The translations under genes and the position numbers were made by a program. A DNA stretch of 64,000 nt from Macrostomum lignano (taxonomy: Eukaryota), in assembly GCA_002269645.1 (NCBI GenBank), contig NIVC01001216.1, forward strand, positions 270,340 to 334,339. Direction: 5' to 3'. Below the pieces are notes generated by a model. That model was not told the origin of the DNA. It made no database searches and saw nothing but the letters and a program-made list of their open reading frames with translations. This document shows, one piece after another, positions 23,031 through 57,983 of this stretch (position 1 is the stretch's first letter; each line of letters opens with the position of its first letter).

Positions 23031-23044
23031 ATCGTCATGGTAAC
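23031..23044 (+). promoter_or_regulatory. RFX X-box-like motif 36 bp upstream of the TOGARAM1 ATG
   Basis: ATCGTCATGGTAAC; 13/14 match to GTYRYCATRGYAAC, at the expected position for a ciliary gene. Confidence 0.6.
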
Positions 23045-35000: not shown

Positions 35001-38000
35001 TCGTTTTAGATATCAGAATGTCGTTTTAGATATCAGAATGGCATTTTAGATATCAGAATGTCGTTTTAGATATCAGAATGTCGTTTTAGATATCAGAATG
35101 TCGTTTTAGATATCAGAATGTCATTTTAGATATCAGAATGTCGTTTTAGATATCAGAATGTCGTTTTAGATATCAGAATGGCATTTTAGATATCAGAATG
35201 TCGTTTTAGATATCAGAATGTCATTTTAGATATCAGAATGGCATTTTAGATATCAGAATGTCATTTTAGATATCAGAATGGCATTTTAGATATCAGAATG
35301 GCATTTTAGATATCAGAATGGCATTTTAGATATCAGAATGTCATTTTAGATATCAGAATGGCATTTTAGATATCAGGGAATGTTATTATAGATTTTAAAA
35401 TACCATTTTAAGTCCGAGAACTAGTTTTAAACCTTAAAAGTTTCGAAAATTTACATTATATATTTGTAATATATTAATAGTATTAAAGTACGTTTTCGTT
35501 TTTGTTTCAAAAAAATAAGGTAGCTCTGTTTTTAATTCATTGTTAGACAAGCTTTATTTAAAACTATTATTATTTGTGTTGTTACGTGCCGTTAAAAACA
35601 ATTTGTTATTGTCTATCGATAGCAAAGTATAACTTTAAAAGAAAATAAAACGAACGGAACGAATTTCTTAGCAACCGCATCTAACGCGCAGGCAACCAGT
35701 GGAGCAGCGGTCCCACTGCTAAAGGTTCCTATTTGAAAAACTTGGAAAAGCAGTCGAAACCTCGACTAGTAAAGTCCAAACGACCCGAACTCATTACCTC
35801 CGACGTGCTTGATGACTTGCCTTCGACAAGCCGATCAGTGGCCTCTTCTCAGCCTCAGCAGGCTGCACCTGATCAAGAGGGCTCTGCCGGCAAGCTGCCA
35901 GCAATCCCAAAGCAACAACAACAGAAAAGAGCCTCTGGTGAGGCCCCCCCCCTTCTCAAAGCAACTAAATCCAGCTTACTAAATCTATTTTTAAGCACGT
36001 TGAAAATTATTTCCGAACAACACCAGTCCACACATTTTCCCCGAGAGTGTGAATGAGCACTGCAGTGTGTGATTGCATTAATTATTACTTAATTAATTGT
36101 TTGGCCTCGTGAAATTGTGATTGCGCCATTGCTAACCACCGGCTTGTCCATATAAGTCGGATTAAATTAAAAACGAAAAGAATAAAGCTCTAAATGTATA
36201 TGCTGATTACTGTCACACAGACTTCCTTATCTGATTGTTTAAAGAAGCGTCAAATTGGGATCACACATGTACAGTGCAAGATATACTTAAAATTATAGAG
36301 ACGTCAGTTCAGAATCATAGAGGCGTCAGTTCAGGATCATAGAGGCGTCAGTTCAGGATCATAGAGACGTCAGCTCAGGATCATAGAGACGTCAGCTCAG
36401 GATCATAGAGGCGTCAGCTCAGGATCATAGAGGCGTCAGCTCAGGATCATAGAGGCGTCAGTTCAGGATCATAGAGGCGTCAGTTCAGGATCATAGAGGC
36501 GTCAGTTTAGGATCATAGGGAAGTCAAACAACAAGATATTGAAAATCACCTGATTTGACCACCAGATGGCAGTATGTGGGATGTGGTGCTTAGATACACC
36601 AACAAAATTAAACTATGGTATATCAAAACAATTAAAAGGAATCAGTTCCCCATAGCTTTGCATGTTTACAGCTAATAATCAATATTTTTATAGAATTATT
36701 TGCAATCATTGGCGGCACTTTCAACTAGCAATTTTGCTCGTTTTAAAATCGGAATGAACATTTCTGCACAAGTTATTAAATTTATTCTACTCTACTATAA
36801 GAGTGTAACAACCAGGTATGAAACTATTGATAATTTGCTTTCCTAAGTCCCTATTGCGTCTTTCTTGCAGCGAAATCGAAATTTTCTGACAAAATTTCTG
36901 CTCCAAAAGAGCAACCACAGCAGCAGCAACAGCAGCAGCAGCAGCTGCCACAAGTGCAGGCTGCCATCCCGGCAAAATCTTTGGCGAGAGTCAATTCGAA
37001 AGGTTCTTGTAGCTGATTGGATTGCATTCACTTTTCACTGCCTCCATCTCCCCTTTTCCTTTCTTCTCTCCCTCTCTCACTCCCTTCCTCTCTCTCCCTC
37101 TCTCCCTCTCTCCCTCTCTCCCTTCCTCTCCCTTCCTCTCTCTCCTCTCTCTCCCTCCCTCCCTCCCTCCCTGTCTCCCTCTCTCATTCCCTGTCTCCCT
37201 CTCTCATTCCCTGTCTCCATCTCTCCCTATCTCTCCCTCTCTCTCTCGTTTCGTATCGGTCTTTCTCTCCCCTCTCCTTATCCCTCCGCCAGTGTCCGGT
37301 GTTTTGTAGATCTAAAATGCGGGATGGTTAATGAGTAGTTCTCAAAATAAAAAAATATTCTCATTGTAGCGATTTGAAAATGATACTGTAGCGAAGTTAA
37401 TTATGACGTGAATATCTGTGATAAAAATTATTAAAGCTTTACCATGATGAGACGCAGTTCTCATTTCTAACTATTTAACATAGCATTTTTTGTTTCGTTT
37501 AATTGCTCAACATTTTTTGGACATAACTTTCAATTTTATGAGTCGTATTTCCTGCCCGTGAATATTAAAATAAGATATTATATTTGATTACTTACCCACA
37601 CAGACTCTGTGGCAGCCTCTGAAGCGAAAAACAAAAGACAGGGCGGACCCAGCTACGATTCGGGCAATGGAGACGGTAAGCAGAATTTAGACAGATCTTT
37701 TTGTGTAAATAAAATTCTATTTTTGTGCCTTTTCACGTTGATAGTGAATTTTTGAGAGTGAAGGGTGTACTGTAGAAATGAAAAGACCGATGGTCCGCCA
37801 AAAACTATTTGGAGCTGAGGCTCAAGCGAGACGATATCAAAACGTAAACCGTAAGCCGTACACAGGGCTAATAAGCCCTCTCGATGATATATATATTTAT
37901 TGCAGTCAGTCAGAATCAGCCAGCGTGGAGGGGGTGGGTGCAGAGATGGGCCTGGGCTAAATCAGCGTACATAGAAAATTGAATAATAAACACGTACGTA

Positions 38001-41000
38001 CATTAAATCACGCAGTGGAATTGGAAAGAAAATCAATGCTACTAATCTACCTCCCAAACATACCCCCCACCTTGGCATAACAATGACAAAAAAACTATTC
38101 GAGGGATGAAACAATGAAAACGAATACGGTATTGGGAAAATATTCGAAAACGATGCGTGATGCAAAATCAAACTCAAAAAGCAAAAAAAACAACGTTGCA
38201 TGAAAAATAATGGCGACATTGTGACGGGTAGAAAATTAGATGACAATAAGTACGCAGATCATGGATGACAATCGAAAATTTTGCAAAAGTGCGTCAGCTA
38301 TCAAGACAGATTTCCAAATTAAATACGAAAGCAAATTACCACCACCAGCCACCGCAACTGAAGCAAAAAATGAAACAAAAATTGTAAGCATTGGGCTATC
38401 AAAAGGTCGTTACTAGTGCAAAAACTATGGAACGTCTAAGCGCAGAAAATCAAGCAATATTAAGTAGAGCTCAAAGAATGCAAACATCGCTCGTAAAAAA
38501 CTCAAAAAACACAAAAGATAAACTTGCCGACAAATTCACTAAACCGTAACGACTGCTCTTCAGCAAAATCCACGCAAGAAAATAAATAGCTAAATAATGA
38601 ATGTTAATCGCGTTGAACACTGAAAACGAAAATTGGGTTAAGACGGCAAAAACAGGGTGATTCCTATTAGCATGAAAGGGAAAGAAGACTTTACGAACAA
38701 TGCAACAAGCAGGAAAATTGAACAACTCATCAGAAAAATTGCAAAAACCAGACAAAGACTAATTTTCTAACAAAAGTTTGCAAACTAACCTGACGATATT
38801 GGACACAACTTTGATATTGGTCTCGTCATTGTGCGATCACCGACTCTGATTGAGGCGACTCTCACGTGACCGTCAGGACCGCGCATGACGTCCAGCACGC
38901 GAGCCAGCGGCCAGTGACCCCGAGGCGAGTCCGGGCTCACCAGCAGCGCCACGTCTCCAGGTTGTAGGTCAGGCAGCTCGCGGCGCCAATTGCTCCGCGG
39001 TGCGAGTCCCGGCAGCCACTCGTGCCACCACCGGCGCCAGATCTGCGACACCAGCTGCTGAACGTGACGCCATCTTCTTGAAGGACTGCGGGCGATGGCA
39101 GCGTCGACCTTCGGTGCAAACTTCCCGCCGACTTGCCCGATGAGGAAGTGATTCGGCGTCAGCGGCACATCATCAGCCGGATGCGCTGTCTGGTACGTCA
39201 GCGGCCTTGAATTAAGAAGTGCCTCCACTCCAGCAAACGCGCTTAGCAGCTCCTCATCGGTGACGTCCGTCTCCCTCAGAATTGACCAGATTGACTGCCA
39301 AAGCTCCTGCATCAGAATCTTCGCCTGCACGACAAACGGGGAGATCAATCCAAGTGGATCAAAGACACTCGCTAGCTTTGTCAGCAAACTCCTTCTTGTG
39401 GTCACCTGATACGACTCGTTTTCGTCTTTAAAAGTAAATTCGCCCTGCTCACTCTGCCCCGTGATACCCAGTGTCTTGGTGCTTGGTAGTTCTTTGCTGT
39501 CCAAATTAACTTCTGCTGCACGGTCTTCAGGTGGGATTCTATCGAGCACAGCTCTCGAGTTCGAGACCCACTTGCACGCGTGCATGCCTGCGCGCCTCCA
39601 GAGCTCACTGAGTTGATCGTACAGCCTGCAGGCGGCTGCCTCGGTGGGCGCAGAGTCCAGGCTGTCATCCATATAGGTAGAGTGCAGTACTGTCTTGGCC
39701 GCCTCTGGAAGCTCACCTTTTAACTTTTCAGCATGGCAGCGGGTAACGAACTGTGCCAAGAAAGGAGAGCTGGTGACGCCGAACACCACTCTGTTGAACT
39801 CGTAGACATCCGGTTGCTTTGAAGGATCGGCGTCCCGCCAAAGGAAACTGTGCAGCGGCCTGTCCTTCGGATCCATCTCGATCTGGAGATACATTTCCGC
39901 TACGTCGCATGCGATCGCAATCGGGTGTCGGCGGAACCGAAGCAGCACGTCAACCAAATGGCAGCTTGGTAGTCGCGCTCCGTCTCCTCCATTTCGTCTA
40001 GTAGGCGCTGTCGCCTCTCGTTGTCCTTGGCGTCGGCGTAGCCTTCATGCAGTTCTTCCTGAATGGCGCTGACCAGGTCCTGCAGGTCTGACAGAGCGTC
40101 ACAGGCAACTTGCACTTCGTCATCAGAGGCGTGCGTCTTTAACAGCCAAGACAGCTTGTTTTTGCAACGAGTGAACGCTGCTTTTTTTCGGGATTTCTCG
40201 AAGCGCAGCTTCTCTAAACGTAGGGCGCCGGCATCGTCTTGGGCTTCCTGCTGCTGCTGCTCATTGGCGTCGTCACTGTCCATCCTGGTCCTTCGTTTCA
40301 CAGTAGGGTTCTATTGCTTGCCACGTCAGTGGTAAGTTAGGCTTGTCCAACCACGCTCTGCTACCAAAATGTACTGTAGAAATGAAAAGACCGATGGTCC
40401 GCCAAAAACTATTTGGAGCTGAGGCTCAAGCGAGACGATATCAAAACGTAAACCGTAAGCCGTACACAGGGCTAATAAGCCCTCTCGATGATATATATAT
40501 TTATTGCAGTCAGTCAGAATCAGCCAGCGTGGAGGGGGTGGGTGCAGAGATGGGCCTGGGCTAAATCAGCGTACATAGAAAATTGAATAATAAACACGTA
40601 CGTACATTAAATCACGCAGTGGAATTGGAAAGAAAATCAATGCTACTAATCTACCTCCCAAACAAAGGGGGAGGGAGAGAGAGGGAGAGGGAGAGGGGGA
40701 GTGGGGGGAGGTAGAGAGGGGAGTGGGGGGAGGGAGAGAGGGAGAGTGGGGAAAGGAGAGGGAGAGTGGGGGGAGGGAGAGAGGGAGAGTGGGGGAAAGG
40801 AGAGTGGGGGGAAGGAAAGTGGGAGAGTGTGGGGGGTAGAGAAGGAGTGAGAGGGAGTGAGAGAGATAGTGAGGGGGAGGGAGAAGGAGAGTGATGGTTA
40901 AGGAGAGAGGGAGGGGGCAGAGATGGGGAGAGAGATATTCCATTCCCTTCAAAGTCCAGGGCAGTCTGTATCGCATCGCTGCCATCAATGCATCATCATA

Positions 41001-44000
41001 TTCGATGCTGTTTACTAGGAGGTCAAATTTTCGTCCTGTCAACATCTGCAGGCGAAAGCAAAAAACACGCAATTAATGGCAATTTTGGCTGGGTCGAAAA
41101 CGACCGGCTGACGGTTTCTGCGTTCCCTGTCCTCGTCTCAGCTTCCTTTTCACTCCTTAATTTTCCAAACAGAGCTATATAATTACAGCAAGTCTGCGTC
41201 TCACTTTCCTGTGAAGTCCGACATGCTCAAACGACTTCATTCTGACATTAATTGAGTAGCTATATTGTCAGAAGCTGCTGCTCAACACGCTAACTAATGT
41301 CATTGGTTACCCTTCAGACGACGTTTCTAATTCTCATTCAGATGGAACTAAATCCCATTCAGATGGAACTAAATCCCATTCAGATGGAACTAAATCCCAT
41401 TCAGATGGAACTAAATCCCATTCAGATGGAACTAAATCCCATTTAGATGGAACTAAATCCCATTCAGATGGAACTAAATCCCATTCAGATGGAACTAAAT
41501 CCCATTCAGATGGAACTAAATCCCATTTAGATGGAACTAAATCCCATTCAGATGGAACTAAATCCCATTCAGATGGAACTAAATCCCATTCAGACGGAAC
41601 TAAACTCCTTCAGACGGAACTAAACTCCTTCAGACAGAACTAAAATCGTTTAGATGGAACTAAACTCCTATTAAGACTGTGGCAAATCCCATTCAGACGG
41701 TATTAAAACCTTACTTAATCCTTCGATGCTATATCAGTCATTTTTGTGTCCCGTTCTCCCCTTGCAGCAGCGGAGGCGGCCTCCCCGGTGCCCATGAAAC
41801 CGCAGTTGGCTCGTTCGGCTGGCAAAAAGCCGAAACGAGCGACCGCCGGGCCGTCGAACCCGCCATCCGACTCCGGAGTGGGTGCTGCGGCCGCAAACTA
41901 CTCCACAACCAGTACTACCGCTCCGTCCTCTACTAGGGGCAGCCAAATTGATGCAGCAGAGGAGCACCCACCGCCAGAAGAGGTGAGCAAACTAACTAGT
42001 TTGCCCAGTCTAATGCCTTTTAGTGTATTGGGAATAGAATGGATTGCTAATCTATTCTCTTTGCAGTGTATTGAGAATAGAATGGATTGCTAATCTATTC
42101 TCTTTTGAGTGTATTGGGAAAAGAATGGATTGCTAATCTATTCTCTTTGCAGTGTATTGGGAATAGAATGGATTGCTAATCTATTCTCTTTTCAGTGTAT
42201 TGGGAATAGAATGGATTGCTAATCTATTCTCTTTGCATTTTATTGGAAATAGAATGGATTGCTAACCTATTCTCTTTGCAGTGTATTGAGAATAGAATGG
42301 ATTGCTAATCTATTCTCTTTGCAGTGTATTGAGAATAGAATGGATTGCTAATCTATTCTCTTTGCAGTTTATTGGGAATAGAATGGATTGCTAATCTATT
42401 CTCTTTGCAGTGTATTGGGAATAGAATGGATTGCTAATCTATTCTCTTTGCATTTTATTGGGAATAGAATGGATTGCTAATCTATTCTCTTTGCAGTCTA
42501 TTGAGAATAGAATGGATTGCTAATCTATTCTCTTTGCAGTGTATTGAGAATAGAATGGATTGCTAATCCATTCTCTTTGCAGTGTATTGAGAATAGAATG
42601 GATTGCTAATCTATTCTCTTTGCAGTCTATTAAGAATAGAATGGATTGCTAATCTATTCTCTTTGCAGTCTATTAAGAATAGAATGGATTGCTAATCTAT
42701 TCTCTTTGCATTGTATTGGGAATAGAATGGATTGCTAATCTATTCTCTTTGCAGTCTATTAAGAATAGAATGGATTGCTAATCTATTCTCTTTTCAGTGT
42801 ATTGGAAATAGAATGGATTGCTAATCTATTCTCTTTTCAGTGTATTGGAAATAGAATGGATTGCTAATCTATTCTCTTTGCAGTGTATTGGGAATAGAAT
42901 GGATTGCTAATCTATTCTCTTTTGAGTGTATTGGGAATAGAATGGATTGCTAATCTATTCTCTTTGCAGTGTATTGGGAATAGAATGGATTGCTAATCTA
43001 TTCTCTTTTGAGTGTATTGGGAATAGAATGGATTGCTAATCTATTCTCTTTTGAGTGTATTGGGAATAGAATGGATTGCTAATCTATTCTCTTTTGAGTG
43101 TATTGGGAATAGAATGGATTGCTAATCTATTCTCTTTTGAGTGTATTGGGAATAGAATGGATTGCTAATCTATTCTCTTTGCAGTGTATTGGGAATAGAA
43201 TGGATTGCTAATCTATTCTCTTTTGAGTGTATTGGGAATAGAATGGATTGCTAATCTATTCTCTTTGCAGTGTATTGGGAATAGAATGGATTGCTAATCT
43301 ATTCTCTTTTGAGTGTATTGGGAATAGAATGGATTGCTAATCTATTCTCTTTTGAGTGTATTGGGAATAGAATGGATTGCTAATCTATTCTCTTTGCAGT
43401 TTATTGGGAATAGAATGGATTGCTAATCTATTCTCTTAGCAGTTTATTGAGAATAGAATGGATTGCTAATCTATTCTCTTTGCAGTTTATTGAGAATAGA
43501 ATGGATTGCTAATCTATTCTCTTAGCAGTTTATTGAGAATAGAATGGATTGCTAATCTATTCTCTTTGCAATTTATTGAGAATAGAATGGATTGCTAATC
43601 TATTCTCTTTGCAGTGTATTGGGAATAGAATGGATTGCTAATCTATTCTCTTTGCAGTGTATTGAGAATAGAATGGATTGCTAATCTATTCTCTTTTGAG
43701 TGTATTGGGAATAGAATGGATTGCTAATCTATTCTCTTTGCAGTGTATTGAGAATAGAATGGATTGCTAATCTAGATGAAGCAATGGAATGCTGCATTAC
43801 TAATCTAGCGAATAATGTTTTAATTTTACATAATTTTCACTAACCTACTGTAATGTCAAAATAATGCACTTTTATTAAGGAGGATGCAAAGCTAACAAGC
43901 GGTCTCTATGATAATCTTGCAGCAGTTGCATCACTGCATCATTGGAACTGGTTGCTATCTCCATAGCAACCGCTCGTGCAGTCGTGTGTTCCAGTTGAAC

Positions 44001-47000
44001 CCTAAAAATGAATCCCAGGTCTGGCCTAATGCCAATGGCAATTAACTATCCCAAAATTGGTTTTATACAGATTCATATTTTCATAAATTTATTGCATGTT
44101 AAATTGTGAACGTTGTCTGGCTGACGCACCAGTGACTGCTGCTGCAGCCTGAATGCCGGAGAGGCAGTATGGGAAATGCTTTAAACACCACCCTACCACT
44201 AAATACCCCACTCCAGTTACCACACTCCAAACACCACACTCCAGTTACCACACTCCAAACACCACACTCCAGTTACCACACTCCAAACACCACACTCCAG
44301 TTACCACACTCCAAACACCACACTCCAGTTACCACACTCCAAACACCACACTCCAGTTACCACACTTTAAACACTACACTCCAGTTACCACACTCCAAAC
44401 ACCACACTCCAGTTACCACACTCCAAACACAACACTCCAGTTACCACACTCCAGTTACCACACTCCAAACACAACACTCCAGTTACCACACTCCAGTTAC
44501 CACACTCCAGTTACAACACTCCAGTTACAACACTCCAGTTACAACACTCCAGTTACAACACTCCAGTTACCACACTCCAGTTACCACACTCCAGTTACCA
44601 CACTCCAGTTACAACACTCCAGTTACAACACTCCAGTTACAACACTCCAGTTACCACACTCCAGTTACAACACTCCAGTTGCCACACTTCAGTTACAACA
44701 CTCCAGTTACAACACTCCAGTTACCACACTCCAGTTACAACACTCCAGTTACAACACTCCAGTTACAACACTCCAGTTACAACACTCCAGTTACAACACT
44801 CCAGTTACAACACTCCAGTTACCACACTCCAGTTACAACACTCCAGTTACCACACTCCAGTTACCACACTCCAGTTACCACACTCCAGTTACAACACTCC
44901 AGTTACAACACTCCAGTTACAACACTCCAGTTACCACACTCCAGTTACCACACTCCAGTTACCACACTCCAGTTACAACACTCCAGTTACCACACTCCAG
45001 TTACCACACTCCAGTTACAACACTCCAGTTGCCACACTTCAGTTACAACACTCCAGTTACAACACTCCAGTTACCACACTCCAAACACAACACTCCAGTT
45101 ACCACACTCCAGTTACAACACTCCAGTTACCACACTCCAGTTACAACACTCCAGTTACCACACTCCAGTTACCACACTCCAGTTACCACACTCCAGTTAC
45201 AACACTCCAGTTACAACACTCCAGTTACCACACTCCAGTTACCACACTCCAGTTACCACACTCCAGTTACAACACTCCAGTTACCACACTCCAGTTACCA
45301 CTTTCCAGTTACAACACTCCAGTTACAACACTCCAGTTACCACACTCCAGTTACCACACTCCAGTTACCACACTCCAGTTACAACACTCCAGTTACCACA
45401 CTCCAGTTACCACACTCCAGTTACAACACTCCAGTTGCCACACTTCAGTTACAACACTCCAGTTACAACACTCCAGTTACCACACTCCAAACACAACACT
45501 CCAGTTACCACACTCCAGTTACAACACTCCAGTTACCACACTCCAGTTACAACACTCCAGTTACCACACTCCAGTTACCACACTCCAGTTACCACACTCC
45601 AGTTACAACACTCCAGTTACAACACTCCAGTTACCACACTCCAGTTACCACTTTCCAGTTACAACACTCCAGTTACAACACTCCAGTTACAACACTCCAG
45701 TTACAACACTCCAGTTACAACACTCCAGTTACCACACTCCAGTTACAACACTCCAGTTACCACACTCCAGTTACAACACTCCAGTTACAACACTCCAGTT
45801 ACAACACTCCAGTTACCACACTCCAGTTACCACACTCCAGTTACCACACTCCAGTTACAACACTCCAGTTACCACACTCCAGTTACCACACTCCAGTTAC
45901 AACACTCCAGTTGCCACACTTCAGTTACAACACTCCAGTTACCACACTCCAGTTACCACACTCCAGTTACCACACTCCAGTTACAACACTCCAGTTACAA
46001 CACTCCAGTTACCACACTCCAGTTACAACACTCCAGTTGCCACACTTCAGTTACAACACTCCAGTTACAACACTCCAGTTACCACACTCCAGTTACCACA
46101 CTCCAGTTACAACACTCCAGTTACCACACTCCAGTTACCACTTTCCAGTTACAACACTCCAGTTACAACACTCCAGTTACCACACTCCAGTTACCACACT
46201 CCAGTTACCACACTCCAGTTACAACACTCCAGTTACCACACTCCAGTTACCACACTCCAGTTACAACACTCCAGTTGCCACACTTCAGTTACAACACTCC
46301 AGTTACAACACTCCAGTTACCACACTCCAAACACAACACTCCAGTTACCACACTCCAGTTACAACACTCCAGTTACCACACTCCAGTTACAACACTCCAG
46401 TTACCACACTCCAGTTACAACACTCCAGTTACAACACTCCAGTTACCACACTCCAGTTACCACTTTCCAGTTACAACACTCCAGTTACAACACTCCAGTT
46501 ACAACACTCCAGTTACAACACTCCAGTTACAACACTCCAGTTACCACACTCCAGTTACAACACTCCAGTTACCACTTTCCAGTTACAACACTCCAGTTAC
46601 CACACTCCAGTTACCACTTTCCAGTTACAACACTCCAGTTACAACACTCCAGTTACAACACTCCAGTTACCACACTCCAGTTACCACACTCCAGTTACCA
46701 CACTCCAGTTACCACACTCCATATCCCACATCTCCGCAGTACCAAATGTTGAGTAATTGCCTGGTAACAACTTTTCATTTCGTTCCAAAATTTGCTGTAT
46801 CATTCAACTATTGGATTTTCCACTTGACTCTATTCCACAAAATTACACAAATTATTGACAGAATTCTGCGCCTCTGTCACGTGCAGAATTTTCGAAATGT
46901 TGACGTTGTGTTGCCATAGTAACTGTCGAATATTTTCAGTATTTTTTCGTTTTGCATGTTGCTAATGTTGCAGTTCTTTTTGACGAGAATGAAAGAAAGA

Positions 47001-50000
47001 AAACTTATAATTTCATTTATATGCAAGTCTGGGACAGACAGTAAAACTGTCGCATGTTTTCATAAATAGACTTTTTGTTGTCTAAGCAGGTTCCGGAACC
47101 TGGTTTACCTTAGTCTGCAATTTAGAACCCATGGTCCTGTCTTACACTGCACTCTCAGATTAACGGCTCGCTCCACTACATTCGGCACTCTGCATCGAGG
47201 AAGAAGGCTTTGAAAGTTTTCGAAAATGCCGAATCCAATCACGGAGCCGCAGGTGGAAAAAGGTGAGAAAATTTCCCTAGCAACTATTGTTATCCCTAGC
47301 AACGATTGTTATCCCTAGCAACGATTGTTATCCCTAGCAACGTTTGTTATCCCTAGCAACGATTGTTATCCCTAGCAACGTTTGTTATCCCTAGCAACGA
47401 TTGTTATCCCTAGCAACGTTTGTTATCCCTAGCAATGATTGTTATCCCTAGCAACGATTGTTATTCCTAGCAACGATTGTTATCCCTAGCAACGATTGTT
47501 ATCCCTAGCAACGATTGTTATCCCTAGCAACGATTGTTATCCCTAGCAACGATTGTTATCCCTAGCAACGATTTTTATCCCTAGCAATGATTGTTATCCC
47601 TAGCAACGATTGTTATTCCTAGCAACAACAGGATTCCTATCGTTTTATTTCGCCAGCTCCGGTGGCAGCGGCACATCACCTCAGGCGCAGGACCTTCCAC
47701 CGGAGGCCACCGGAGGCGGGCCCCAGAGCCGCTACAATCCTCATCAAGGCGCCACCTTCCGGCCCAACCCGTCCTACCACAGCGAAGTTGTCGGTCGCGC
47801 CTACGGCGACGACCAGGCCAGCAGCAGCGGCTTCGGCGACTTTGGCGACGGTGGCGGCAGCGGCAGCGGCGGGACGCCACCTGCCTCGGTGGTTCGCGGG
47901 CGTCAGCAGCAGCGGAAGAATCTGCGAGGTTCGTAGCAACGAGATTTCCCTATCTAGCACACTGGGATTTCCCTATCTAACACACTAGGATATCCCTATC
48001 TAACACACTGGGATTTCCCTATCTAACACACTGGGATTTCCCTATCTAACACACTGGGATTTCCCTATCTAACAAACTGGGATTTCCCTATTTAACACAC
48101 TGGGATTTCCCTATCTAACACACTGGGATTTACCTATCTAACACACTGGGATTTCCCTATCTAACACACTGGGATTTCCCTATCTAACACCTGGGATTTC
48201 CCTATCTAACACACTGGGATTTCCCTATCCAGCACACTGGGATTTCCCTATCTAACACACTGGGATTTCCCTATCTAACACACTGGGATTTCCCTATCTA
48301 ACACACTGGGATTTCCCTATCTAACACCTGGGATTTCCCTATCTAACACACTGGGATATCCCTATCTAACACCTGGGATTTCCCTATCTAACACACTGGG
48401 ATTTCCCTATCTAACACACTGGGATTTCCCTATCTAACACACTGGTATTTCCCTATCTAACACACTGGGATTTCCCTATTTAACACACTGGGATTTCCCT
48501 ATCTAACACACTGGGATTTCCCTATCCAGCACACTGGGATTTCCCTATCTAACACCTTCGCAGGTACGTACTCGAGCTCGCCAATACAAGCGGCATCAGC
48601 CTTGGATTCCGACAACGCAGATTCGGGCCTGCAGCGAGGCGGCAGGGAGCCCGAGTTTAACATTGTTGGCAGAGGTAGGCAGGGCACAGGCGTGTCTGTT
48701 TAATTCAATTTTCTTAAAACAGTTTTATCCTGAAAAAACACCCGATAATTTTTCACCGAATTCTCATGTGTACTAACCAATTAACAGACGGAATCGATGA
48801 GGCTGCAGGTAAAATGCTTATCAAAGTCGAACTGTTTAAATATCAACGGAATATCAACTGATTTAAGCTTGTAGTATTGCAATAAATTTGATTTGACCAA
48901 ATTTCACCCCGGCCCTAAATGGCGCAACGTCTTCGGCGACGTCCTTATTTAAAAGTACAATTTTACGATAGTACTTGAACTGTAAGCTGGATTGACCCAG
49001 TTTGCGTAAATTATCAAATATTCTTCTTCAATTGTCAAACACCACATCCCACAGTCCACATCCCACAGTCCATATCCCACAGTCCACATCCCACACTCCG
49101 CACTCCGCAGGTGTATTCGAGGTGCAACCAGCTGCCGTGAGTCCTTTACCTCGCGCTGAGGTGCTCACCAGCAGCGGCGGCTTCGGCAGCGGCAGCGGTG
49201 GAAACTTCAGCTCGGCACCCTCGACAGTCGCGACTGACTCTTCAGCGCTCAGCGGCGGAGTTCAGGGCACCGCCTATCGGCCAAATTTGATTGGCAACGG
49301 AGGCCCCGATGATGAGGAGGATTCTGCGCCCAGCGATAGAGAAAGGCAGCAGCAGCAGCAGCTGCAGCGGACCCTCAGCAACACCCTGCGGGAGAGCGTG
49401 GCCTTGCGGCAGCGGCAGCGGGCGGCGGCCGAGAGGAGCGCCAGCAAAGCTGAGACAGAAGATGAGAGGCTCATTCGCGAGCTGCGAGAGGTGAGCTGCC
49501 TTCAGGATCTTCAGCAGTCCCCGAAAGCATCTTCAGGAATCGGCCTCTAAATGCCTTCAGGAATCGGCCTCTAAATGCCTTCAGGAATCGGCCTCTAATC
49601 TCCTTCAGGAATCGGCCTCTAATCTCCTTCAGGAATCGGCCTCTAATCTCTTTCGGAAATCAGCCCCTAATCTTTTTCAGGAATCAGCCTTATGATTGGT
49701 TTTTTCATAAAACTTAAACCAGCTACTTTTAGTAAGCTAGAGTGAATATTTTATTTCAAAAAACAAAATTTCGCGCCTGTCCTCAGGGTTCAGCGAATGC
49801 TGACACAGCTCAGTTGTCGCACAGACAGCAACAGGAGCAGACTGTGTCAGACTCTGATAGCAATCTTGCTAAAGAGTTGCGCGAAGTAAGACACTCATTG
49901 ATCGATATCAGCGAAATTATTTCTTGTATACGGAATTGCTTTTTTATAAATTAACAGTTGTTAGTGCTAACTTTTGGTCCGACTGATTGCTGTTGACATG

Positions 50001-53000
50001 GGCGCAAAATACCCTCGTGTTCTGGGTTATTGAGTACCTGACACAAGGTCTGACACTATCTCTGACATTAGTCATAGCTGACACCATGCCTGACACATGA
50101 GTCATAGCTGACATCATGCCTGACACATGAGTCGTAGCTGACACCATGCCTGACACATGAGTCGTAGCTGACACCATGCCTGACACATGAGTCATAGCTG
50201 ACATCATGCCTGACACACGAGTCATAGCTGACATCATGCCTGACACTTGAGTCGTAGCTGACACCATGCCTGACACATGAGTCATAGCTGACATCATGTC
50301 TGACACACGAGTCATAGCTGACACTCACCATGCCTGACACATGAGTCATAGCTGACACTCACCATGCCTGACACACGAGTCATAGCTGACACCCACCATG
50401 CCTGACACACGAGTCATAGCTGACACTCACCATGCCTGACACACGAGTCATAGCTGACAAATAGTCAGACTAAAGAATAAAAGCTGACAAAATCTCTGAC
50501 TCACTAAGTCAAAATAGGCATAATTGTCTGACTCATTCGCTATTGAAAATATCAACATTTACTAACAACTCCCGCTTGTTGACTTTAATTAATGTGTCAG
50601 GTTGACTCTAACAAAAAGTTAATGCATTTTTTTGTAACAAAAAAGCCGTGTTTACTGATGGCGTTACTGATGGCGAAGTTTTTATTAAACCTCAACAAGC
50701 TTCAAACTTATCGATGAATTGAATTCGATTGTACAACTTCACTGCAGCAGCCAAGTCCCAGTCAAAGCAGAGGTCACTCGGTGCAGAGCAGGCTGGACTA
50801 TGCTCAAATGCTCTTCCAGGTGAAACAAAACCGCCTTAGCTAGATAGGGAAATCCAACAATAACTTGGTGACACCTTTAGAAAAAACAATAAAAATCTTT
50901 CAGTAGCATAGGCACGAGTGAATCTAATTTAAATAGAATATTTAACAATCTAGTAGCTAGTCTATCTGTAAAACTATTATTATTCTTCAGTTTTAAAACT
51001 CTTTCAGTGGACAATATAAAAAAATTAGAACATTTTAACCCACTGGTTGGCTAATCAGAATTATTTATCTAACTTCCGTAATTTACTTGAAAATTAAAAT
51101 ACAAACTTTTTGAAAAACTCATTCAGTAAGTGTTCAGTAGTGCAATTAGCGTTTTTCGTTATTTTTCTTGTTTCTAGTGTGTCATTAATCTTCCAGCCAA
51201 TCAACTTGCACCGCAGGAACAGCTGGCCATCTCCAAGCGGCACACGGACAGCATCGGGGTGGACAGCGACTCCGAGAGCACCCGGGGCTCCGTGCGCAAC
51301 TACGCATTGGCCAGCCTTAACAGAAAAGTGTCCGACCGTGAGTGCGCGTGACACAAGTTTTGAGCTGCTGGCTTCTCATCTTTATTGTGAAATTCTTAAT
51401 TCTATACTGTTTTTCTTTATTATCTTCTCACCGTCTCCCCTATCTCATCCTCTCTCCATCAATCTCACCCTCTCCCCTCCCAAATCTCACCCTCCCCCCA
51501 AATCTTACCCTCTCACCCCCAAATCTCACCCTCTCGCCCCAAATCTCACCCTCTCTCCCCAAAATCTCACTCTCTCTCCCCAAATCTCACCCTCTTTCCT
51601 CCCAAATCTCACCCTCTTTCCTCCCAAATCTCACCCTCTTTCCTCCCAAATCTCACCCTCTTTCCTCCCAAATCTCACCCTCCCCCTTCCAAATCTTACC
51701 CTCTCTCCCCCAAATCTCACCCTCTCCCCTCCAAAATCTCACTCTCTACCCTCCCAAATCTCACCCTCCCCCCAAATCTCACCCTCTCTCCCCAAATCTC
51801 ACCCTCTTTCCTCCCAAATCTCACCCTCCCCTCCAAGTCTCACCCTCTCTCCCCCAAATCTCATCCTCTCTCTCTCAAATCTCACCCTCTCACCCCCAAA
51901 TCTCACCCTCTCTCCCCAAATCTCACCCTCTTTCCTCCCAAATCTCACCCTCCCCTCCAAGTCTCACCCTCTCTCCCCCAAATCTCATCCTCTCTCTCTC
52001 AAATCTCACCCTCTCTCCCCCAAATCTCATCCTCTCTCTCTCAAATCTCACCCTCTCTCCCCCAAATCTCACCCTCTCCCTTAATCTCCCCTCTCCCTCA
52101 ATCTCACCCACCTCACACTAGCCAAACCAATCACCACATTCACAGAGAGCTTCAGCGCCGCTCCGGACGCTGCCGCAGCTGCAGCCTCTCCGGCAGCCTC
52201 GAAGCCACCAGCCCCCAGGCGGAACCTCAGCCGACCGCTGCGACCTTCGCCGAGCCAGACGGGGCCGCCTTCGTCCAGCGAATCGCTTCAGTCGTCGGCT
52301 CCGGCAGCTTCAGGCCCACTGGCCAATCCAGACCGATCGCTTCAGGAGGCGCTGACGCGAGTGCAGGCCAGCGACTGGCAGGCCAAGTGCGAGGGCCTTC
52401 AGCTGGTTCAACGACTGGCCGCAAACCATCCAGAAGTGGCCGCCAGAGAGATGCACCCGCTGACCCTGGCCGTCATTGGCGAAGTGAAAAATCTTCGCTC
52501 CCAGGTGTCTCGACTGGCAATGTCGACTCTCGGCTGCCTGCTGCAGCACCTGGGCAAACGGATGGACGCTGAGCTTGAGCAGTGCGCAAAAATTCTACTG
52601 CAGAAAGGCAGCGAGACTAACAAGTGAGTTTCCTGAGCTGAGGCAATTCTGCTCATTCCGTTTGGCTCCTGACTGAGTTGAGGTCCTGACCCTCCTTGGG
52701 GGCCATATATTAAACAGACACTTTGACAATAGGAACAGTCTATGGGTCTGCAGCCAAGGGCTCAATAGGTTTCTGACTCGGAAATGGCTGCTCTATATTG
52801 TAACTTTTATTGCAATCTGATGCGTTTTCAACAACTGTCTGCAGATTTATCCAAGAAGACGCTGAGTCGGCACTGATGAGCATGGTTGAGCACTGCAACC
52901 AGGGACGAGCCCTCGGAGCGATCATACAGGTGAAGCAATGATCCTAGGGGATTTTTCCTGGCAGAGATTTGAGAATGGTTCAGAGTTGAGAAAAGTCTGG

Positions 53001-56000
53001 GCAAGACTTAATGGGACTGAGTGAGATTTGGTGAGACTGGATGAGATTTGGTGAGACTGGGAGAGATTTGGTGAGACTGGGGGAGATTTAGTGAGACTGG
53101 ATGAGAGTTGGTGAGACTGGATGAGATTTGGTGAGACTGGATGCGATTTTGTGAGACTGGATGAGATTTTGTGAGACTGGATGAGATTTGGTGAGACTGG
53201 GAGAGATTTGGTGGGACTGGGGGAGATTTAGTGAGACTGGATGAGATTTGGTGAGACTGGATGAGATTTGGTGAGACTGGATGCGATTTTGTGAGACTGG
53301 ATGAGATTTGGTGAGACTGGATGCGATTTTGTGAGACTGGATGAGATTTGGTGAGACTGGATGCGATTTTGTGAGACTGGATGAGATTTGGGGAGACTGG
53401 ACGCGATTTTCTGAGACTGTGTGAGATTTAGTGAGACTGGGTGAGATTTTGTGAGACTGGATGCGATTTTGTGAGACTGGATGCGATTTTGTGAGACTGG
53501 ATGCAATTTTGTGAGACTGGATGCGATTTTGTGAGACTGGATGCGATTTTGTGAGACTGGATGCGATTTTGTGAGACTGGATGAGATTTGGTGAGACTGA
53601 GTGAGATTTGGTGAGACTGGGTGAGATTTGGTGAGACTGGAAGAGATTTTCTGGGACAGCGTGGGATTTGGTGAGACTGGATGAGATTTGTTAAGACTGC
53701 ATCTCTGATATCGATATTGGTACAAAATGGAACAGATATTAAGACAGTTGCAGATTGAGATTGGAAACAGGTCAAGATCTAGTTTGAGACTAGCATAAGA
53801 TAGATTCAGAAGAGACAGACTTAGATTTGGGAATGAGACTCTGTGAGACCGCTTGTCAATACTTGAAATCCGAGCGAGACTCCCCTGTCCCTCCCGGCGC
53901 TCAGGGCGGCGCCAGCCACAAGAGCTCCCAGGTGCGCAGCCTGTGCGCGCAGATTCTCTCCGAGCTGTGCGATCGCATGGGCCCCGGCCGGGTGCTCTCC
54001 GGCGTCAAGGACGTCACCGACAAGCTGCTAGCCACGGCGGCAAATTTCTGTCTAGACGGCAGTCAGGAGACTCGATACTGGGGCCGGACAATTCTGTACC
54101 CGCTGCTCGGCCACCAGGACTTTGACGCGCTGATCAGCAAGCACGTATCACCTGCCGTGATGCGCAACCTCAAGGATGTGCTGGAGAATCTCCGGCTGAA
54201 AGGCGTCGGCGACCAGCCGCCGTCGACGTTTAGCGCCGGCACAAAAAGTCGGCGCGGCAACTCGGCCGGCTCGGCGGACTCGGCCAGTCTGGCCGGATCG
54301 TACGCTTCGACCTCGACGACGGGACAGTCGGCGCCGTTGGGCCGCCAGAGAGGCGCCGCTGGCAGCAACAGTCGGCTGAGCGACGCCGCCGCCGACTTGG
54401 TGAAGACGGCCTGCCAAAGGCTGAACGCTCCGGACTGGAAGGAGCGGCTGTCTGGGATCGACCAGCTGGCTGAGCTGAGCCAGGAGCGCACGGATCTGGT
54501 TGGCCAGTGCATTGTGAAGGTATGGCGTCTTCGCGTGTTCGTGTCTTTATGTCTCAATGCCGTTGTTGCCTTTACGCTCGTATTTATTGGTGTCCTATTG
54601 TGTCTTCATGTCTTGGTGTCCTATTGTGTCTTCATGTCTTGGTGTCCTATTGTGTCTTCATGTCTTGGTGTCCTATTGTGTCTTCATGTCTTGGTGTCCT
54701 ATTGTGTCTTCATGTCTTGGTGTCATATTGTGTCTTCATGTCTTGGTGTCCTATTGTGTCTTCATGTCTTGGTGTCCTACTGTGTCTTCATGTCTTGGTG
54801 TCCTATTGTGTCTTCATGTCTTGGTGTCCTATTGTGTCTTCATGTCTTGGTGTCCTATTGTGTCTTCTCTTCATGTCTTGGTGTCTTCATGCCTTGCTAT
54901 CCTATTGTGTCGTGTCTTGGTGCCAAATTGTGTCTTTATGTATTGGTGTCCTATTCTGTCTTCTTTTCTTCATGCCCAAGTGCTTAATACTCGTACCTCA
55001 AACAATTCGGACAACTCATTTTTAGTACGAGCGTATATTTGATTAGTCATTCGAAAATTCAAACAGGTGATGTTCTGTCTTAGCGGTTAGGACCAGTTGA
55101 TCTTCAAAAGTTCTGAAGAGGTTGACTTAAATTTTAAGACAATCCGGTTTTGAAGTCGTGGCTTAAACTTTCAAGCTTTTTTCATACCTGAGACCACTCA
55201 GCACCGCTCAGCCACTCCATCCACCTCCGTCCCTCCCGCGCAGTTCATGGACGCATTCGCGCCTCGTCTGGGTGATTCCAATTCAAAGGTGCAACAGCAC
55301 GCATTGGAAACCGCCCTGCAGCTGGTGCACCCGTTGCGCAACTACCTGCCCACGGTGGCCAACACACTCGTGCAGCACGCTGCTCCCGTGCTGTCATCGA
55401 AATCCGCCGAGTTGGCCAGCTTAGCCGGACAGCTGCTGGACATCTTCATCCTGGAGGTGGACTCGGAGAAACTGGCTCAACCGTTTGTACAGGTGACTGG
55501 TGAAGTGCACACCTCTCTCATTACAGTACAGGGTCTACATAAGTGAACTTTTTAGTTAAATGAGGCGCTTCAGACACTTCCCAATTCGGTAATTCAGACA
55601 CTTCCCAATTCGGTAATTCAGACACTTCCCAATTCGGTAATTCAGACACTTTCCAATTCGGTAATTCAGACACTTCCCAATTCGGTAATTCAGACACTTC
55701 CCAATTCGGTAATTCAGACACTTCCCAATTCGGTGATTCAGACACTTCCCAATTTTGGTGTCCCCTGTTTTAACACCCTGTTTTCAACTTTAATTACTTT
55801 TAATTACTTGTATAACCAAATTTTGCACCACATACACTACTCAATCGACTCTGAACACCCAGCTGTTAGGTTTAAATCCTACATGCATATAGAATCTGAC
55901 AATTATTTGGTCCCGCAGGCCGTTGCCACCGGAAATCCGCGCTCAAAACCGGAACTGGTGGACAAACTGGCGGCGCTAGCGGAGCGTTTGGCGCCAAGAA

Positions 56001-56230: not shown

Positions 56231-57983
56231 ATTGTAATCGCCAGATTTTATATTTTAACGTTATTAAGTAGTACAGTGTGTACAAAAATCTATCCGGGTG
56301 TGCTTGGGTTGTTTTTGGGCTTGACTTTGATTTTTAATTACTTGTAAAATTGTTTATCGAAACATTTCATTAACTTTATAAATGAGCCTCCAGTCTGGGC
56401 TTACTAAAGTGTTTACAATCGCCAGATTTTTTTATTTTTAATTCGCGTATTGTACTTTAGCTGCCTGCGCGCCGTCCGCCCCAATCCAACATTCGTTCTA
56501 GCTAGCGCTCTCCCCCTTTCCTTTTTAGAATGTAAATTCAGTTGACTCGTAAATGTACACACAGAATAGCCCCCGCCACCCCATTCACTCGTTCAATCGG
56601 TTCAAGCCCTTTCGCTCGATTACTGTTCCGCCTCTTCTCTTACGAGCTATCTTGTCATCTAAATAGCTTAAACTCATAAACTGTTGTTCTTGTGACCGCC
56701 TTAGTACGAGATTAGCTAATATACATTATTTACGTATACTTTATTTTATTAGACTATCATTTTGGTGAAATACGAGTATGTAATGAATACGCTCAATTTT
56801 CCTGATTTGTGTCTTATGCTTATCGCTTGTTTTAAGTGACTAATGATTTTTATACTTGAAAGTGAGAATTATTTCATACCATGATAGTAGTAAATTGATT
56901 CAGCCAACAAGCAAACACACTACAACGACACTACTACATAAAACATTGAATTAATACGAGGGGTTAGATTAATTTAATCTTTTAAAAACGAAAATAAATA
57001 TTTTAAATAGACTTTTGTTTTAAATGTTTCTCACTAAACGTATCAAATGCTTTCGTGGCTGCTTATAAATTTGTACTTCGCTACGACAGAAACTTGATGC
57101 TTACGTTGCATGCTTTGTTGCGTTTTCCTGCGTCTCACTGTGATCTCATTTTGCCTTCGAACTGTGATTTAAAAAAAAGCTAAATTCAGCGACAAGCTTT
57201 CATTCTGTACAGCAGATCGGTCTGATGCGGTTTCGCGGACTTTGCTGTTTTATTTTCATTCTGTTGAAAGTGCAGTCTGTATACGTAGCAGTATATAATT
57301 GCAACATTTGTTATGTGTAACCACGCAAATCCGAACAAAACTTTCCCGTTTGCTGGTTCAAAGCTGTATAAAGAGGCCGTCCAAAAAATACTAGACTAAC
57401 GCTTTCGCCCAGTTTATTTTTATTGAAGAATAATGTGCTTCAACTGCTAATTATAACCTTTACTAATGTGCTCTCTCCTGCCTGTGCATTCCGATATTCT
57501 GGTGTATAATCGTAAAACCAGTATATGTAAAAAAATCTCCGTCCAATTCCTTTATAGTTGTTTTGTTATACTTCTATTTTTCTGGCTCAGCAAATTGAAC
57601 AGAGTGGATCGAAGCTGTCCTCTGTTTTTGTAAGTGTATAAAAACCGAAACCTCAAATTGATTTACTATTCAAACGGAAATTCTATCGCAAATCTTTCTT
57701 GTTTGTTTTAAAACACACACCGGAATATACTAGAGACGGCACAATTTTGAATTTACGATAGCTAATTTCTTTGCTTAAAATATACTATTTTTAACATTGT
57801 ATCACTGAGAGCTTGAGTCTTTACTAAAGTTTAATTTAAATGCCAAGTAGTTACTGGACTTTTGTATATTACCATGTTCTGTAAAAAGTTTTAAAGGTAC
57901 ATTTCTATTTTTTTAGATCGCTAGGTTTAAACAAGAGAAAAATATCACACGGAATTATAGATAGACAGGTTTTTCAACCCTGA

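What the first reader, a model, noticed from the sequence alone, without database searches (positions are those of the whole stretch)
46756..47945. A minisatellite made of RFX X-boxes, next to a perfect X-box, in the middle of a ciliary gene
The 19-bp unit of the array at 47275-47630 reads GTTATC-CCT-AGCAAC. This is the RFX X-box layout (GTNRCC N0-3 RGYAAC, one C-to-T change) and it contains CCCTAGCAAC, the core of the MHC-II X1 box. I count 19 copies, 17 with intact TAGCAAC. Within 520 bp upstream lie a perfect X-box GTTGCCATAGTAAC (46910) and ATTGCC-T-GGTAAC (46756); another TAGCAAC opens the next intron (47935). RFX factors are established master regulators of ciliary genes, and TOGARAM1/che-12 is such a gene. 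Under uniform base composition, a GTYRCCATRGYAAC match is expected about 0.004 times in 64 kb. Inference: tandem amplification has built a copy-number-tunable homotypic RFX enhancer or internal promoter.
Basis: partly seen in the sequence, partly recalled or inferred. Interest (0 to 1): 0.8.

Follow-up and report, generated by a model that had tools for sequence, protein, structure and literature searches.

The report
Intronic minisatellite resembling RFX X-boxes
A 19-bp tandem repeat inside an intron of a flatworm cilium gene looks like a string of RFX binding sites, but it is one of dozens of ordinary, unstable repeats in this region, and the convincing RFX sites are four single-copy ones nearby.

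Summary
The sequence features are real. A 19-bp array (47274-47626, 18.6 copies) fills 90% of a 394-bp intron of the Macrostomum lignano TOGARAM1/che-12 orthologue. GTTGCCATAGTAAC sits at 46910.

The context changes the reading. 33 minisatellites cover 35% of the window. Seven of them carry perfect textbook transcription-factor consensus sequences; the neighbouring 23-mer reads GGGATTTCCC (NF-kB).

The 19-mer unit scores 5.5 bits as a standard 14-bp X-box, against a validated median of 17.7. It is acceptable only as the rare 6-3-6 type. Chance that at least one of 33 arrays looks this good is 4-19%, or 0.8% for CCTAGCAAC.

The strong RFX signal is elsewhere. Three single-copy X-boxes score at least 18 bits (28262, 43957, 46910) against 0.03 expected. 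A fourth lies 49 bp upstream of the conserved start codon.

A second genomic copy shows that neighbouring arrays vary greatly in copy number (6.7 vs 76) and that terminal 19-mer copies mutate at motif positions.

Verdict: RFX control of the gene is plausible. The array as a selected, tunable enhancer is unsupported. It is most likely a neutral minisatellite that captured part of an X-box-like sequence.

The parts
47274..47626 (.). 19-bp minisatellite, 18.6 copies, unit TCCCTAGCAACGATTGTTA. Each unit holds one perfect RFX monomer site (GTTGCT, the complement of AGCAAC) and an imperfect partner (GTTATC) 3 nt away.
47263..47656 (+). 394-bp GT-AG intron; the array makes up 90% of it and starts 11 bp after the donor
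   Evidence: The array is intronic in both my model and the ab initio model P0010.
47271..47284 (+). Boundary copy ATTTCCCTAGCAAC. It is a better X-box than the internal units (12.2 bits as a 14-mer; 15.35 by half-sites) and is the possible seed of the array.
47159..47262 (+). Exon upstream of the array (INGSLHYIRHSASRKKALKVFENAESNHGAAGGK)
   Evidence: Frame analysis; used by the M. lignano model P0010
47657..47928 (+). Putative GC-rich exon downstream of the array. It joins in frame to the exons at 47159 and 49110. P0010 skips it, and it differs by four 1-bp indels in the second genomic copy, so its coding status is uncertain.
46910..46923 (.). Canonical palindromic X-box GTTGCCATAGTAAC (18.6 and 19.7 bits on the two strands), identical to the validated C. 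elegans bbs-7 site. It lies in a unique 437-bp island, 249 bp upstream of the exon at 47159.
46756..46768 (.). 13-bp X-box-like site ATTGCCTGGTAAC (1-nt spacer, half-site score 14.6)
43957..43970 (+). X-box ATCTCCATAGCAAC (18.2 bits), in the other unique island of the same 5.2-kb intron
28262..28275 (+). X-box ATTTCCATGGCAAC (20.8 bits), at or just before the start of the TOG2 exon, in the unconserved TOG1-TOG2 linker
23031..23044 (+). Promoter-proximal X-box ATCGTCATGGTAAC (14.5 bits; 13.1 when the identical odr-4 training site is left out). [quoted passage not shown]
47934..47952 (+). Diverged relic copy of the 19-mer (TAGCAACGA--GATTTCCCTA) at the start of the next intron
   Evidence: P=0.0005 against shuffles; also present in the second copy
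47943..48555 (.). Adjacent 23-bp minisatellite (GATTTCCCTATCTAACACACTGG; 26.8 copies here, 42.9 in the second copy). It has no RFX half-site but carries a perfect NF-kB consensus, GGGATTTCCC.
44204..46721 (.). Upstream 28-bp (14-bp sub-unit) minisatellite with about 90 GGTAAC half-sites and no X-box layout
23080..56230 (+). TOGARAM1/crescerin-like gene: TOG1-2 exons at 23.1-29.3 kb, low-complexity linker exons at 34-50 kb, C-terminal HEAT/TOG exons at 53.8-56.2 kb

Best explanation
The 19-bp array is a young, unstable, intron-filling minisatellite of the kind that pervades the Macrostomum lignano genome. It lies in the linker region of the TOGARAM1/che-12 orthologue.

The gene very probably is an RFX target, but through ordinary single-copy 14-bp X-boxes. 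[quoted passage not shown] Three lie inside the gene (28262, 43957, 46910). Two of these sit in the only unique islands of a 5.2-kb intron otherwise overrun by arrays.

The array's likeness to an X-box is most likely a by-product. The local tandem-duplication process captured 11 bp (TCCCTAGCAAC) of an X-box-like 14-mer still visible at the array's 5' edge (ATTTCCCTAGCAAC). The unit junction happened to supply a weak second half-site (GTTATC) at the unusual 3-nt spacing.

Shown: the anatomy, the statistics and the copy-number instability of neighbouring arrays. Inferred: the seeding scenario, and the view that any RFX binding to the array is incidental rather than selected.
For: - 33 arrays cover 22,363 bp, or 35% of the window. 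Tandem repeats make up 15% of the M. lignano genome.
- Five arrays in this gene start 11-40 bp after a GTGAG donor.
- The unit scores 5.46 bits as a 14-mer, against a validated median of 17.7 and 10th percentile of 14.5. The boundary copy scores 12.2.
- 30 of 31 validated X-boxes have a 2-nt spacer, and all but che-12's lie 60-285 bp from the ATG.
- Chance that at least one of 33 units reaches the array's score is 3.6-19%.
- 7 of 33 arrays carry perfect consensus sequences of unrelated factors.
- Variant copies hit motif positions: AGCAAT twice, TTTATC once, GTTATT twice.
- The start of the next intron is a relic 19-mer, and its sister 23-mer array has lost the half-site.
- The second genomic copy (L005, NIVC01001244.1) has very different copy numbers in neighbouring arrays: 26.8 vs 42.9, 6.7 vs 76, 33.9 vs 19. 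Its last 19-mer units are altered at motif positions.
- Single-copy X-boxes of at least 18 bits: 3 observed against 0.03 expected. None of 1000 simulations and none of 1000 column-permuted matrices reach 3.
- The X-box islands are unique sequence, not dispersed repeats.
Against: - As a 6-3-6 site the unit scores 14.3 on half-site matrices, which is within the validated range (10th percentile 13.7). 15-bp X-boxes do function in C. elegans.
- The extended half-site CCCTAGCAAC matches the MHC-II X1 core and is expected in at least one of 33 units only 0.25-0.8% of the time.
- The array lies 350-520 bp from two good X-box sites, in a gene with clear X-box enrichment, so weak cooperative RFX occupancy is plausible.
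- Monomer RFX sites are functional in choanoflagellate promoters.
- In mouse, fewer than a third of RFX peaks are in promoters.
- The constraint test on array variants has very little power (7-8 variants).
Confidence: 0.6

Rival explanations
1. One reading: the array is a functional homotypic cluster of RFX sites (an enhancer or part of an internal promoter), and its copy number sets the expression level of the gene.
For: - The unit scores 14.3 on half-site matrices with a 3-nt spacer, and only 3.6% of shuffled unit sets reach that.
- Each of 17 copies carries a perfect monomer site GTTGCT with the flank CCCTAGCAAC.
- The array is close to the X-boxes at 46910 and 46756.
- Arrays at this locus do change copy number between genomic copies.
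- Multiple X-boxes fine-tune expression in C. elegans.
Against: - The score as a standard X-box is low (5.5 bits).
- Only 1 of 31 validated sites has a 3-nt spacer.
- Minisatellites are everywhere in this window, and several match other factors equally well.
- There is no sign of constraint among the copies.
- The sister array has lost the motif.
- Terminal units differ at motif positions in the second copy.
- The array is 24 kb from the start codon, whereas validated sites are promoter-proximal.
- A rough genome-wide estimate predicts some hundred or more X-box-like arrays by chance (inference).
Confidence: 0.17
2. The unique island with the X-boxes at 46910 and 46756 is an internal promoter or intronic enhancer. 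It could produce a shorter product containing the C-terminal TOG domains, for example through trans-splicing at the acceptor at 47158. The array merely lies downstream and is irrelevant.
For: - Two X-box sites lie 154 bp apart and 249-403 bp upstream of an exon that starts in phase 0.
- The two unique islands of the 5.2-kb intron each keep a strong X-box while the rest has been replaced by arrays.
- About 39% of M. lignano genes are trans-spliced.
- Intronic RFX peaks are common in mouse.
Against: - No transcript-start or trans-splice data were available.
- There is no in-frame ATG in the exons between 47159 and the TOG3 exon.
- Both ab initio models splice straight across this intron.
Confidence: 0.18
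3. Every X-box match in the window, single-copy ones included, is chance or compositional, and RFX plays no part at this locus.
For: - Orthologous loci in Lottia and two other assemblies show no 14-mer X-box of at least 11 bits near the start codon.
- One of the strong sites (28262) contains a Kozak-like CCATGG and may be coding.
Against: - Three sites of at least 18 bits against 0.03 expected, and four of at least 14 bits against 0.4. Only 0-0.3% of simulations or permuted matrices reach these counts.
- One site sits 49 bp upstream of the conserved start codon.
- che-12 is DAF-19-dependent.
- RFX specificity is conserved from fungi to animals.
Confidence: 0.04

Closest known systems
X-box promoter motif of RFX/DAF-19 target genes (C. 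elegans ciliary genes, including bbs-7, odr-4 and che-12)
   Same: The sites at 46910 and 23031 are letter-for-letter identical to the validated bbs-7 and odr-4 X-boxes. The site at 23031 lies at a typical promoter-proximal distance (-49). The gene is the che-12 orthologue.
   Different: Three of the four strong sites are intragenic. The array unit departs from the 14-bp form: it has a 3-nt CCT spacer and a T at position 5 of the left half. No binding or expression data exist for this species.
Genes with multiple X-boxes that fine-tune RFX-dependent expression (Chu et al. 2012, PMC3245922)
   Same: Several X-box-like sites in one target gene, including 15-bp variants.
   Different: In that work there are two or three single sites within a few hundred bp of the start codon, not a tandem array of 17-19 units in an intron 24 kb downstream.
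MHC class II X1 box bound by the RFX5-RFXAP-RFXANK complex
   Same: It shares the core CCCTAGCAAC (the X1 assignment is from general knowledge).
   Different: There is no X2 (CRE-like) or Y (CCAAT) box at the fixed spacing of the S-X-X2-Y module. In the array AGCAAC is followed by GATTGTTAT. From general knowledge, RFX5/CIITA regulation is a vertebrate immune system feature.
Tandem repeats that act as transcription-factor binding arrays (for example GGAA microsatellites bound by EWS-FLI1, or the insulin VNTR; general knowledge)
   Same: Head-to-tail repetition of a factor-like motif, with variable copy number.
   Different: Those cases have direct binding and dosage evidence; this one has none. 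The library held no paper linking RFX or X-box to a minisatellite.
Intronic tandem repeats of the Macrostomum lignano genome
   Same: The array matches them in unit length, homogeneity, position just after the 5' splice site, and copy-number instability between genomic copies.
   Different: Nothing, except that this unit happens to resemble an X-box.

Membership tests
X-box (dimeric RFX binding site) | Two inverted half-sites, GTNRCC and RGYAAC | tested here: inconclusive
   The array unit GTTATC-CCT-AGCAAC has a perfect right half and a left half with one mismatch (T for C at position 5). That base occurs in 4 of 31 validated sites. The single-copy sites at 46910, 43957, 28262 and 23031 meet the feature fully.
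X-box (dimeric RFX binding site) | Spacing of the halves: 2 nt (usually AT) in 30 of 31 validated sites, 3 nt in one | tested here: inconclusive
   The unit has a 3-nt CCT spacer. It scores 5.46 bits on the full 14-mer matrix (poor) and 14.3 on half-sites alone (in range).
X-box (dimeric RFX binding site) | Promoter-proximal position (60-285 bp from the ATG in C. elegans; near the TSS in other animals) | tested here: not met
   The array lies in an intron about 24 kb downstream of the start codon. The site at 23031 meets this feature, at -49.
X-box (dimeric RFX binding site) | Bound by RFX, with RFX-dependent expression | not testable with these tools
   No ChIP, accessibility or expression data were available.
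Minisatellite / VNTR | Head-to-tail copies of a 10-100 bp unit with high identity | tested here: met
   Period 19, 18.6 copies, 95% matches.
Minisatellite / VNTR | Copy number varies between alleles or genomic copies | tested here: inconclusive
   The second copy (L005) breaks inside this array, so its copy number there is unknown. Neighbouring arrays at the same locus differ strongly: 26.8 vs 42.9, 6.7 vs 76, 33.9 vs 19.
MHC-II S-X-X2-Y module | X1 core followed by an X2 (TGCGTCA-like) box and a Y (CCAAT) box at fixed spacing | tested here: not met
   Only the X1-like core is present. The rest of the unit is GATTGTTAT.
TOGARAM/crescerin family (host gene) | Crescerin-type TOG2 domain, with N-terminal and C-terminal TOG pairs separated by a long linker | tested here: met
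   TOG2 matches 5dn7 (FAM179B) at E=3e-62. TOG1-2 align to orthologues. C-terminal HEAT exons are joined in the NCBI M. lignano protein P0011 and match a 361-aa relative. The individual TOG3 and TOG4 folds were not tested.

The most novel reading that the evidence does not exclude
The array is an RFX-bound variable-number tandem repeat. It would be derived from an ancestral intronic X-box, and its copy number would differ between homeologues or strains and modulate expression of a ciliary microtubule regulator. This would be the first RFX-site minisatellite, and an example of the flatworm's rampant intronic repeat turnover being co-opted for cis-regulation.
Probability: 0.12. Interest if true: 0.6.

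Novelty: new member of a known kind. Interest (0 to 1): 0.3.

Why it matters
If the array were a working RFX site cluster, it would show how a mutation-prone repeat can tune a ciliary gene. It would also be easy to test, because M. lignano has transgenesis and RNAi.

As things stand, the useful results are more modest:
- The flatworm TOGARAM1 orthologue carries a statistically solid set of canonical X-boxes: one promoter-proximal and three intragenic. This extends RFX-cilia wiring to a platyhelminth locus and nominates two small intronic islands as enhancers.
- In genomes packed with minisatellites, a repeat unit that matches a transcription-factor consensus is common and should not be read as function without a genome-wide background.

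Tried and rejected
- Tracing the source contig through the single-exon 7TM ORF and through P0009: neither is on record.
- Scan of metagenome contigs for two adjacent 19-mer units: no match.
- Orthologous loci (Lottia L001; L002/L003; L004): no X-box of at least 11 bits near the start codon, so cross-phylum conservation of the promoter X-box is not shown.
- The second M. lignano copy (L005) begins inside the last 19-mer units, so it gives neither the array's copy number nor the upstream X-boxes. No annotated protein gave a handle on the upstream contig.
- Dispersed-repeat origin of the X-box islands: rejected. The only non-self matches are CAG-repeat coding stretches.
- Test for selective constraint from variant positions in the array: only 7-8 variants, and they are not independent, so it is uninformative.
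- Relatedness of the 19-mer and 23-mer consensus units themselves: not significant (P about 0.1). Only the relic copy at the start of the next intron is significant.
- Solved-structure searches for the ORF at 58312-58677 and for the TOG3 exon: no hits.
- Literature: no paper links RFX or X-box to a minisatellite. A flatworm RFX search returned nothing useful. Wasik et al. 2015 is not held, so the spliced-leader idea stays speculative.


Full report
**What is there**

The array is real. Tandem Repeats Finder reports 47274-47626, period 19, 18.6 copies, 95% matches, unit TCCCTAGCAACGATTGTTA. TAGCAAC occurs 17 times in it, CCCTAGCAAC 15 times, and the whole 15-mer GTTATCCCTAGCAAC 14 times. GTTGCCATAGTAAC is at 46910-46923 and ATTGCCTGGTAAC at 46756-46768. 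The TAGCAAC that opens the next intron is at 47934.

**Organism and gene**

- The exon at 28.2-29.4 kb matches the solved TOG2 domain of FAM179B (TOGARAM1/crescerin-1; 5dn7) at E=3e-62, against 8e-12 for CLASP.
- Two UniRef entries and one NCBI protein of Macrostomum lignano match window exons at 95-99% identity: P0009, P0010 and P0011 (BOX15_Mlig001542g3). The window is therefore from M. lignano.
- P0009 joins the 29 kb exon to the 34.6 kb exon. P0010 joins 41.9 kb to 47.16 kb and on to 49.1 kb. P0011 joins the 53.8, 55.2 and 55.9 kb exons. Together these indicate one gene, from the ATG at 23080 to beyond 56.2 kb.
- The product begins MASQVA, like the orthologues' MASKIQVA and MASKVQVA.
- The upstream neighbour (253 to about 6300) is an AK9 orthologue, which also matches a chain in an axoneme cryo-EM entry.

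**Local structure**

| Feature | Coordinates | Note |
|---|---|---|
| Exon | 47159-47262 | |
| Intron (GT-AG) | 47263-47656 | 394 bp; the array is 353 bp of it |
| GC-rich segment | 47657-47928 | putative exon |
| Next exon | from 49110 | |

The GC-rich segment joins in frame to the exon from 49110. P0010 skips it and uses a small exon at 48566-48673 instead. A second genomic copy differs from it by four 1-bp indels. That copy also carries a 1-bp indel in the conserved TOG3 exon, so the indels are not decisive. In either model the array is intronic.

**Context**

- 33 non-overlapping arrays, each with its own unit, cover 22,363 bp, or 35% of the window.
- In the M. lignano genome, simple and tandem repeats make up 15% (PMC5730564).
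- Five arrays in this gene start 11-40 bp after a GTGAG donor.

**How X-box-like is the unit?**

I built matrices from the 31 validated C. elegans X-boxes in Table 1 of PMC3245922. Of these sites, 30 are 14-mers with a 2-nt spacer and one is a 15-mer. All but che-12's lie 60-285 bp from the ATG. Using this matrix on a flatworm is justified because RFX DNA contacts and the monomer site GTTRCY are conserved from fungi to animals (PMC10530576).

| Sequence | 14-mer matrix (bits) | Half-site matrices (bits) |
|---|---|---|
| Validated sites | median 17.7; 10th percentile 14.5 (leave-one-out) | median 15.3; 10th percentile 13.7 |
| Internal array unit | 5.46 | 14.3 (6-3-6 reading) |
| Boundary copy ATTTCCCTAGCAAC (47271) | 12.2 | 15.35 |

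The unit is therefore a poor standard X-box and an acceptable example of the rare 15-bp type.

Chance that at least one of the 33 units does as well:

| Criterion | Chance |
|---|---|
| Consensus at one mismatch or fewer | 19% |
| Half-site score of 14.3 or more | 3.6% |
| Contains TAGCAAC | 11% |
| Contains CCTAGCAAC | 0.8% |
| Contains CCCTAGCAAC | 0.25% |

There is also a look-elsewhere effect. Seven of the 33 arrays carry, in most copies, a perfect match to one of 20 textbook consensus sequences. The adjacent 23-mer has NF-kB GGGATTTCCC plus GATA, the array at 50065 has AP-1, and the array at 31367 has a forkhead site.

A rough extrapolation (inference): about 115 Mb of tandem repeat at about 680 bp per array gives on the order of 1e5 arrays. 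Some hundred or more of these would reach the unit's half-site score by chance.

**Where the RFX signal really is**

| Position | Sequence | Score (bits) | Note |
|---|---|---|---|
| 28262 | ATTTCCATGGCAAC | 20.8 | start of the TOG2 exon region |
| 46910 | GTTGCCATAGTAAC | 18.6 / 19.7 | identical to the bbs-7 site |
| 43957 | ATCTCCATAGCAAC | 18.2 | intron island |
| 23031 | ATCGTCATGGTAAC | 14.5 | identical to the odr-4 site; 49 bp upstream of the ATG |

- At 18 bits or more, 0.03 sites are expected in the 41.6 kb of unique sequence and 3 are seen. None of 1000 first-order Markov simulations and none of 1000 column-permuted matrices on the real sequence reach 3.
- At 14 bits or more, 4 are seen against 0.4 expected, and 0.3% of permuted matrices reach 4.
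- With flexible spacing, 8 loci are seen against 1.6 expected.
- The islands that carry these sites are unique sequence.
- The sites at 43957 and 46910 sit in the only two unique islands of a 5.2-kb intron that is otherwise made of two large arrays.

RFX control of this gene is therefore credible. It agrees with che-12 being DAF-19-dependent. Intragenic RFX sites have precedent in mouse, where fewer than a third of RFX peaks lie in promoters (PMC7498320).

The conclusion that 46910 is not chance still holds.

**Evidence on the array's history**

- Variants among copies fall on motif positions as readily as elsewhere: AGCAAT twice, TTTATC once, GTTATT twice, and three changes in the 4-nt non-motif stretch.
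- The first 24 nt of the next intron contain a diverged copy of the 19-mer (P=0.0005), so that TAGCAAC is a relic of the same family.
- The 23-mer array that follows has lost the half-site: TCTAAC scores -4.9 on the right-half matrix.
- Contig NIVC01001244.1 of assembly Mlig_3_7 (L005) is a second copy of the locus. It is 94-99% identical from 47.6 to 55.5 kb and about 100% identical beyond that.
- L005 starts inside the last 19-mer units. Those units read CCTTGCAAC and GTTGTCCCTAGCAAC, so they differ from the window at motif positions.
- Neighbouring arrays differ greatly in copy number between the two copies:

| Array | Window | L005 |
|---|---|---|
| 23-mer | 26.8 | 42.9 |
| 24-mer | 6.7 | 76 |
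| 20-mer | 33.9 | 19 |

Copy-number change is thus a property of every array at this locus.

**Interpretation**

The most economical account is that a ubiquitous, neutral tandem-duplication process acted in a gene whose non-coding DNA is locally rich in X-boxes. It captured 11 bp of an X-box-like 14-mer next to the splice donor.

Weak RFX binding to the 17 monomer sites is plausible but untested. Nothing indicates selection for a tunable enhancer.

Only a few percent remains for RFX playing no part at all.

**Limits**

No genome-wide search, no close-species comparison of the array and no functional data were possible. Orthologous loci from molluscs and unidentified relatives showed no strong X-box near the start codon. 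Conservation of the promoter site beyond this species is therefore not shown.

Noticed in passing
window 1-64000: 33 minisatellite arrays with private units (periods 4-127 bp) cover 35% of the window. Within the TOGARAM1-like gene almost every intron is largely replaced by one or two arrays, and five arrays start 11-40 bp after a GTGAG donor (29368, 42022, 47274, 47943, 49531).
   Followed up: partly
L005 (NIVC01001244.1) vs window 47599-64000: This is a second genomic copy of the locus. It is about 100% identical from about 55.9 kb onward but only 94-99% identical upstream. Array copy numbers differ greatly (24-mer 6.7 vs 76 copies). It has 1-bp indels even in the conserved TOG3 exon, which may reflect a decaying duplicate or assembly errors. 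The contig starts inside the 19-mer array.
   Followed up: partly
window 47943-48555: The 23-bp array next to the finding carries a perfect NF-kB consensus (GGGATTTCCC) and a GATA site in nearly every copy. Other arrays carry AP-1 (50065), forkhead plus GATA (31367) and GATA (6990) consensus sequences.
   Followed up: yes
window 253-6300 (+): C-terminal two thirds of an adenylate kinase 9 (AK9) orthologue (E about 1e-213 to PDB 9d2f; it also matches a chain of axoneme entry 9fqr). Two cilium-related genes are therefore adjacent. It contains a palindromic 13-mer X-box-like site, GTTTCCTGGAAAC, at 2809 inside coding sequence.
   Followed up: partly
window 58794-58808 (+): A high-scoring 15-bp X-box-like site, GTCTCCGTTGGCAAC (half-site score 18.9), lies about 120-150 bp upstream of a minus-strand ORF (58312-58677). 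That ORF has no match among solved structures and may be the promoter-proximal exon of another RFX target.
   Followed up: partly
window 55922-55936 (-): An X-box-like 15-mer, ATTTCCGGTGGCAAC (17.2), lies inside a coding exon of the TOGARAM1-like gene, where it encodes AVATGN. It is probably coincidental.
   Followed up: no
window 37766-40664: A short LTR retroelement sits in an intron, on the minus strand. Its two 295-nt LTRs are 100% identical (37766-38060 and 40370-40664). Between them lie pol-like (38785-39957) and gag-like (39900-40301) ORFs. It looks like a recent, truncated insertion.
   Followed up: partly
window 13526-14770 (-): A single-exon ORF of 414 aa with the look of a seven-transmembrane receptor lies between the AK9 and TOGARAM1 genes, flanked by arrays.
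   Followed up: no
L001 ~9810, L002/L003 ~9810, L004 ~6190: [quoted passage not shown] It contains a YY1-like GCCGCCAT core. It is absent from the flatworm promoter, which has an X-box instead.
   Followed up: no
window 23066-23078, 47270-47279, 47943-47952: The string GATTTCCC(A)TA recurs just upstream of the start codon, at the 5' edge of the 19-mer array and in the 23-mer unit. Its significance is unknown.
   Followed up: no
P0009, P0010, P0011: Public M. lignano gene models split this one gene into at least three fragments, named CLASP_N domain-containing, SUN domain-containing and hypothetical protein. Some carry frameshifted stretches, so the TOGARAM1 orthologue is not annotated as such.
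   Followed up: partly
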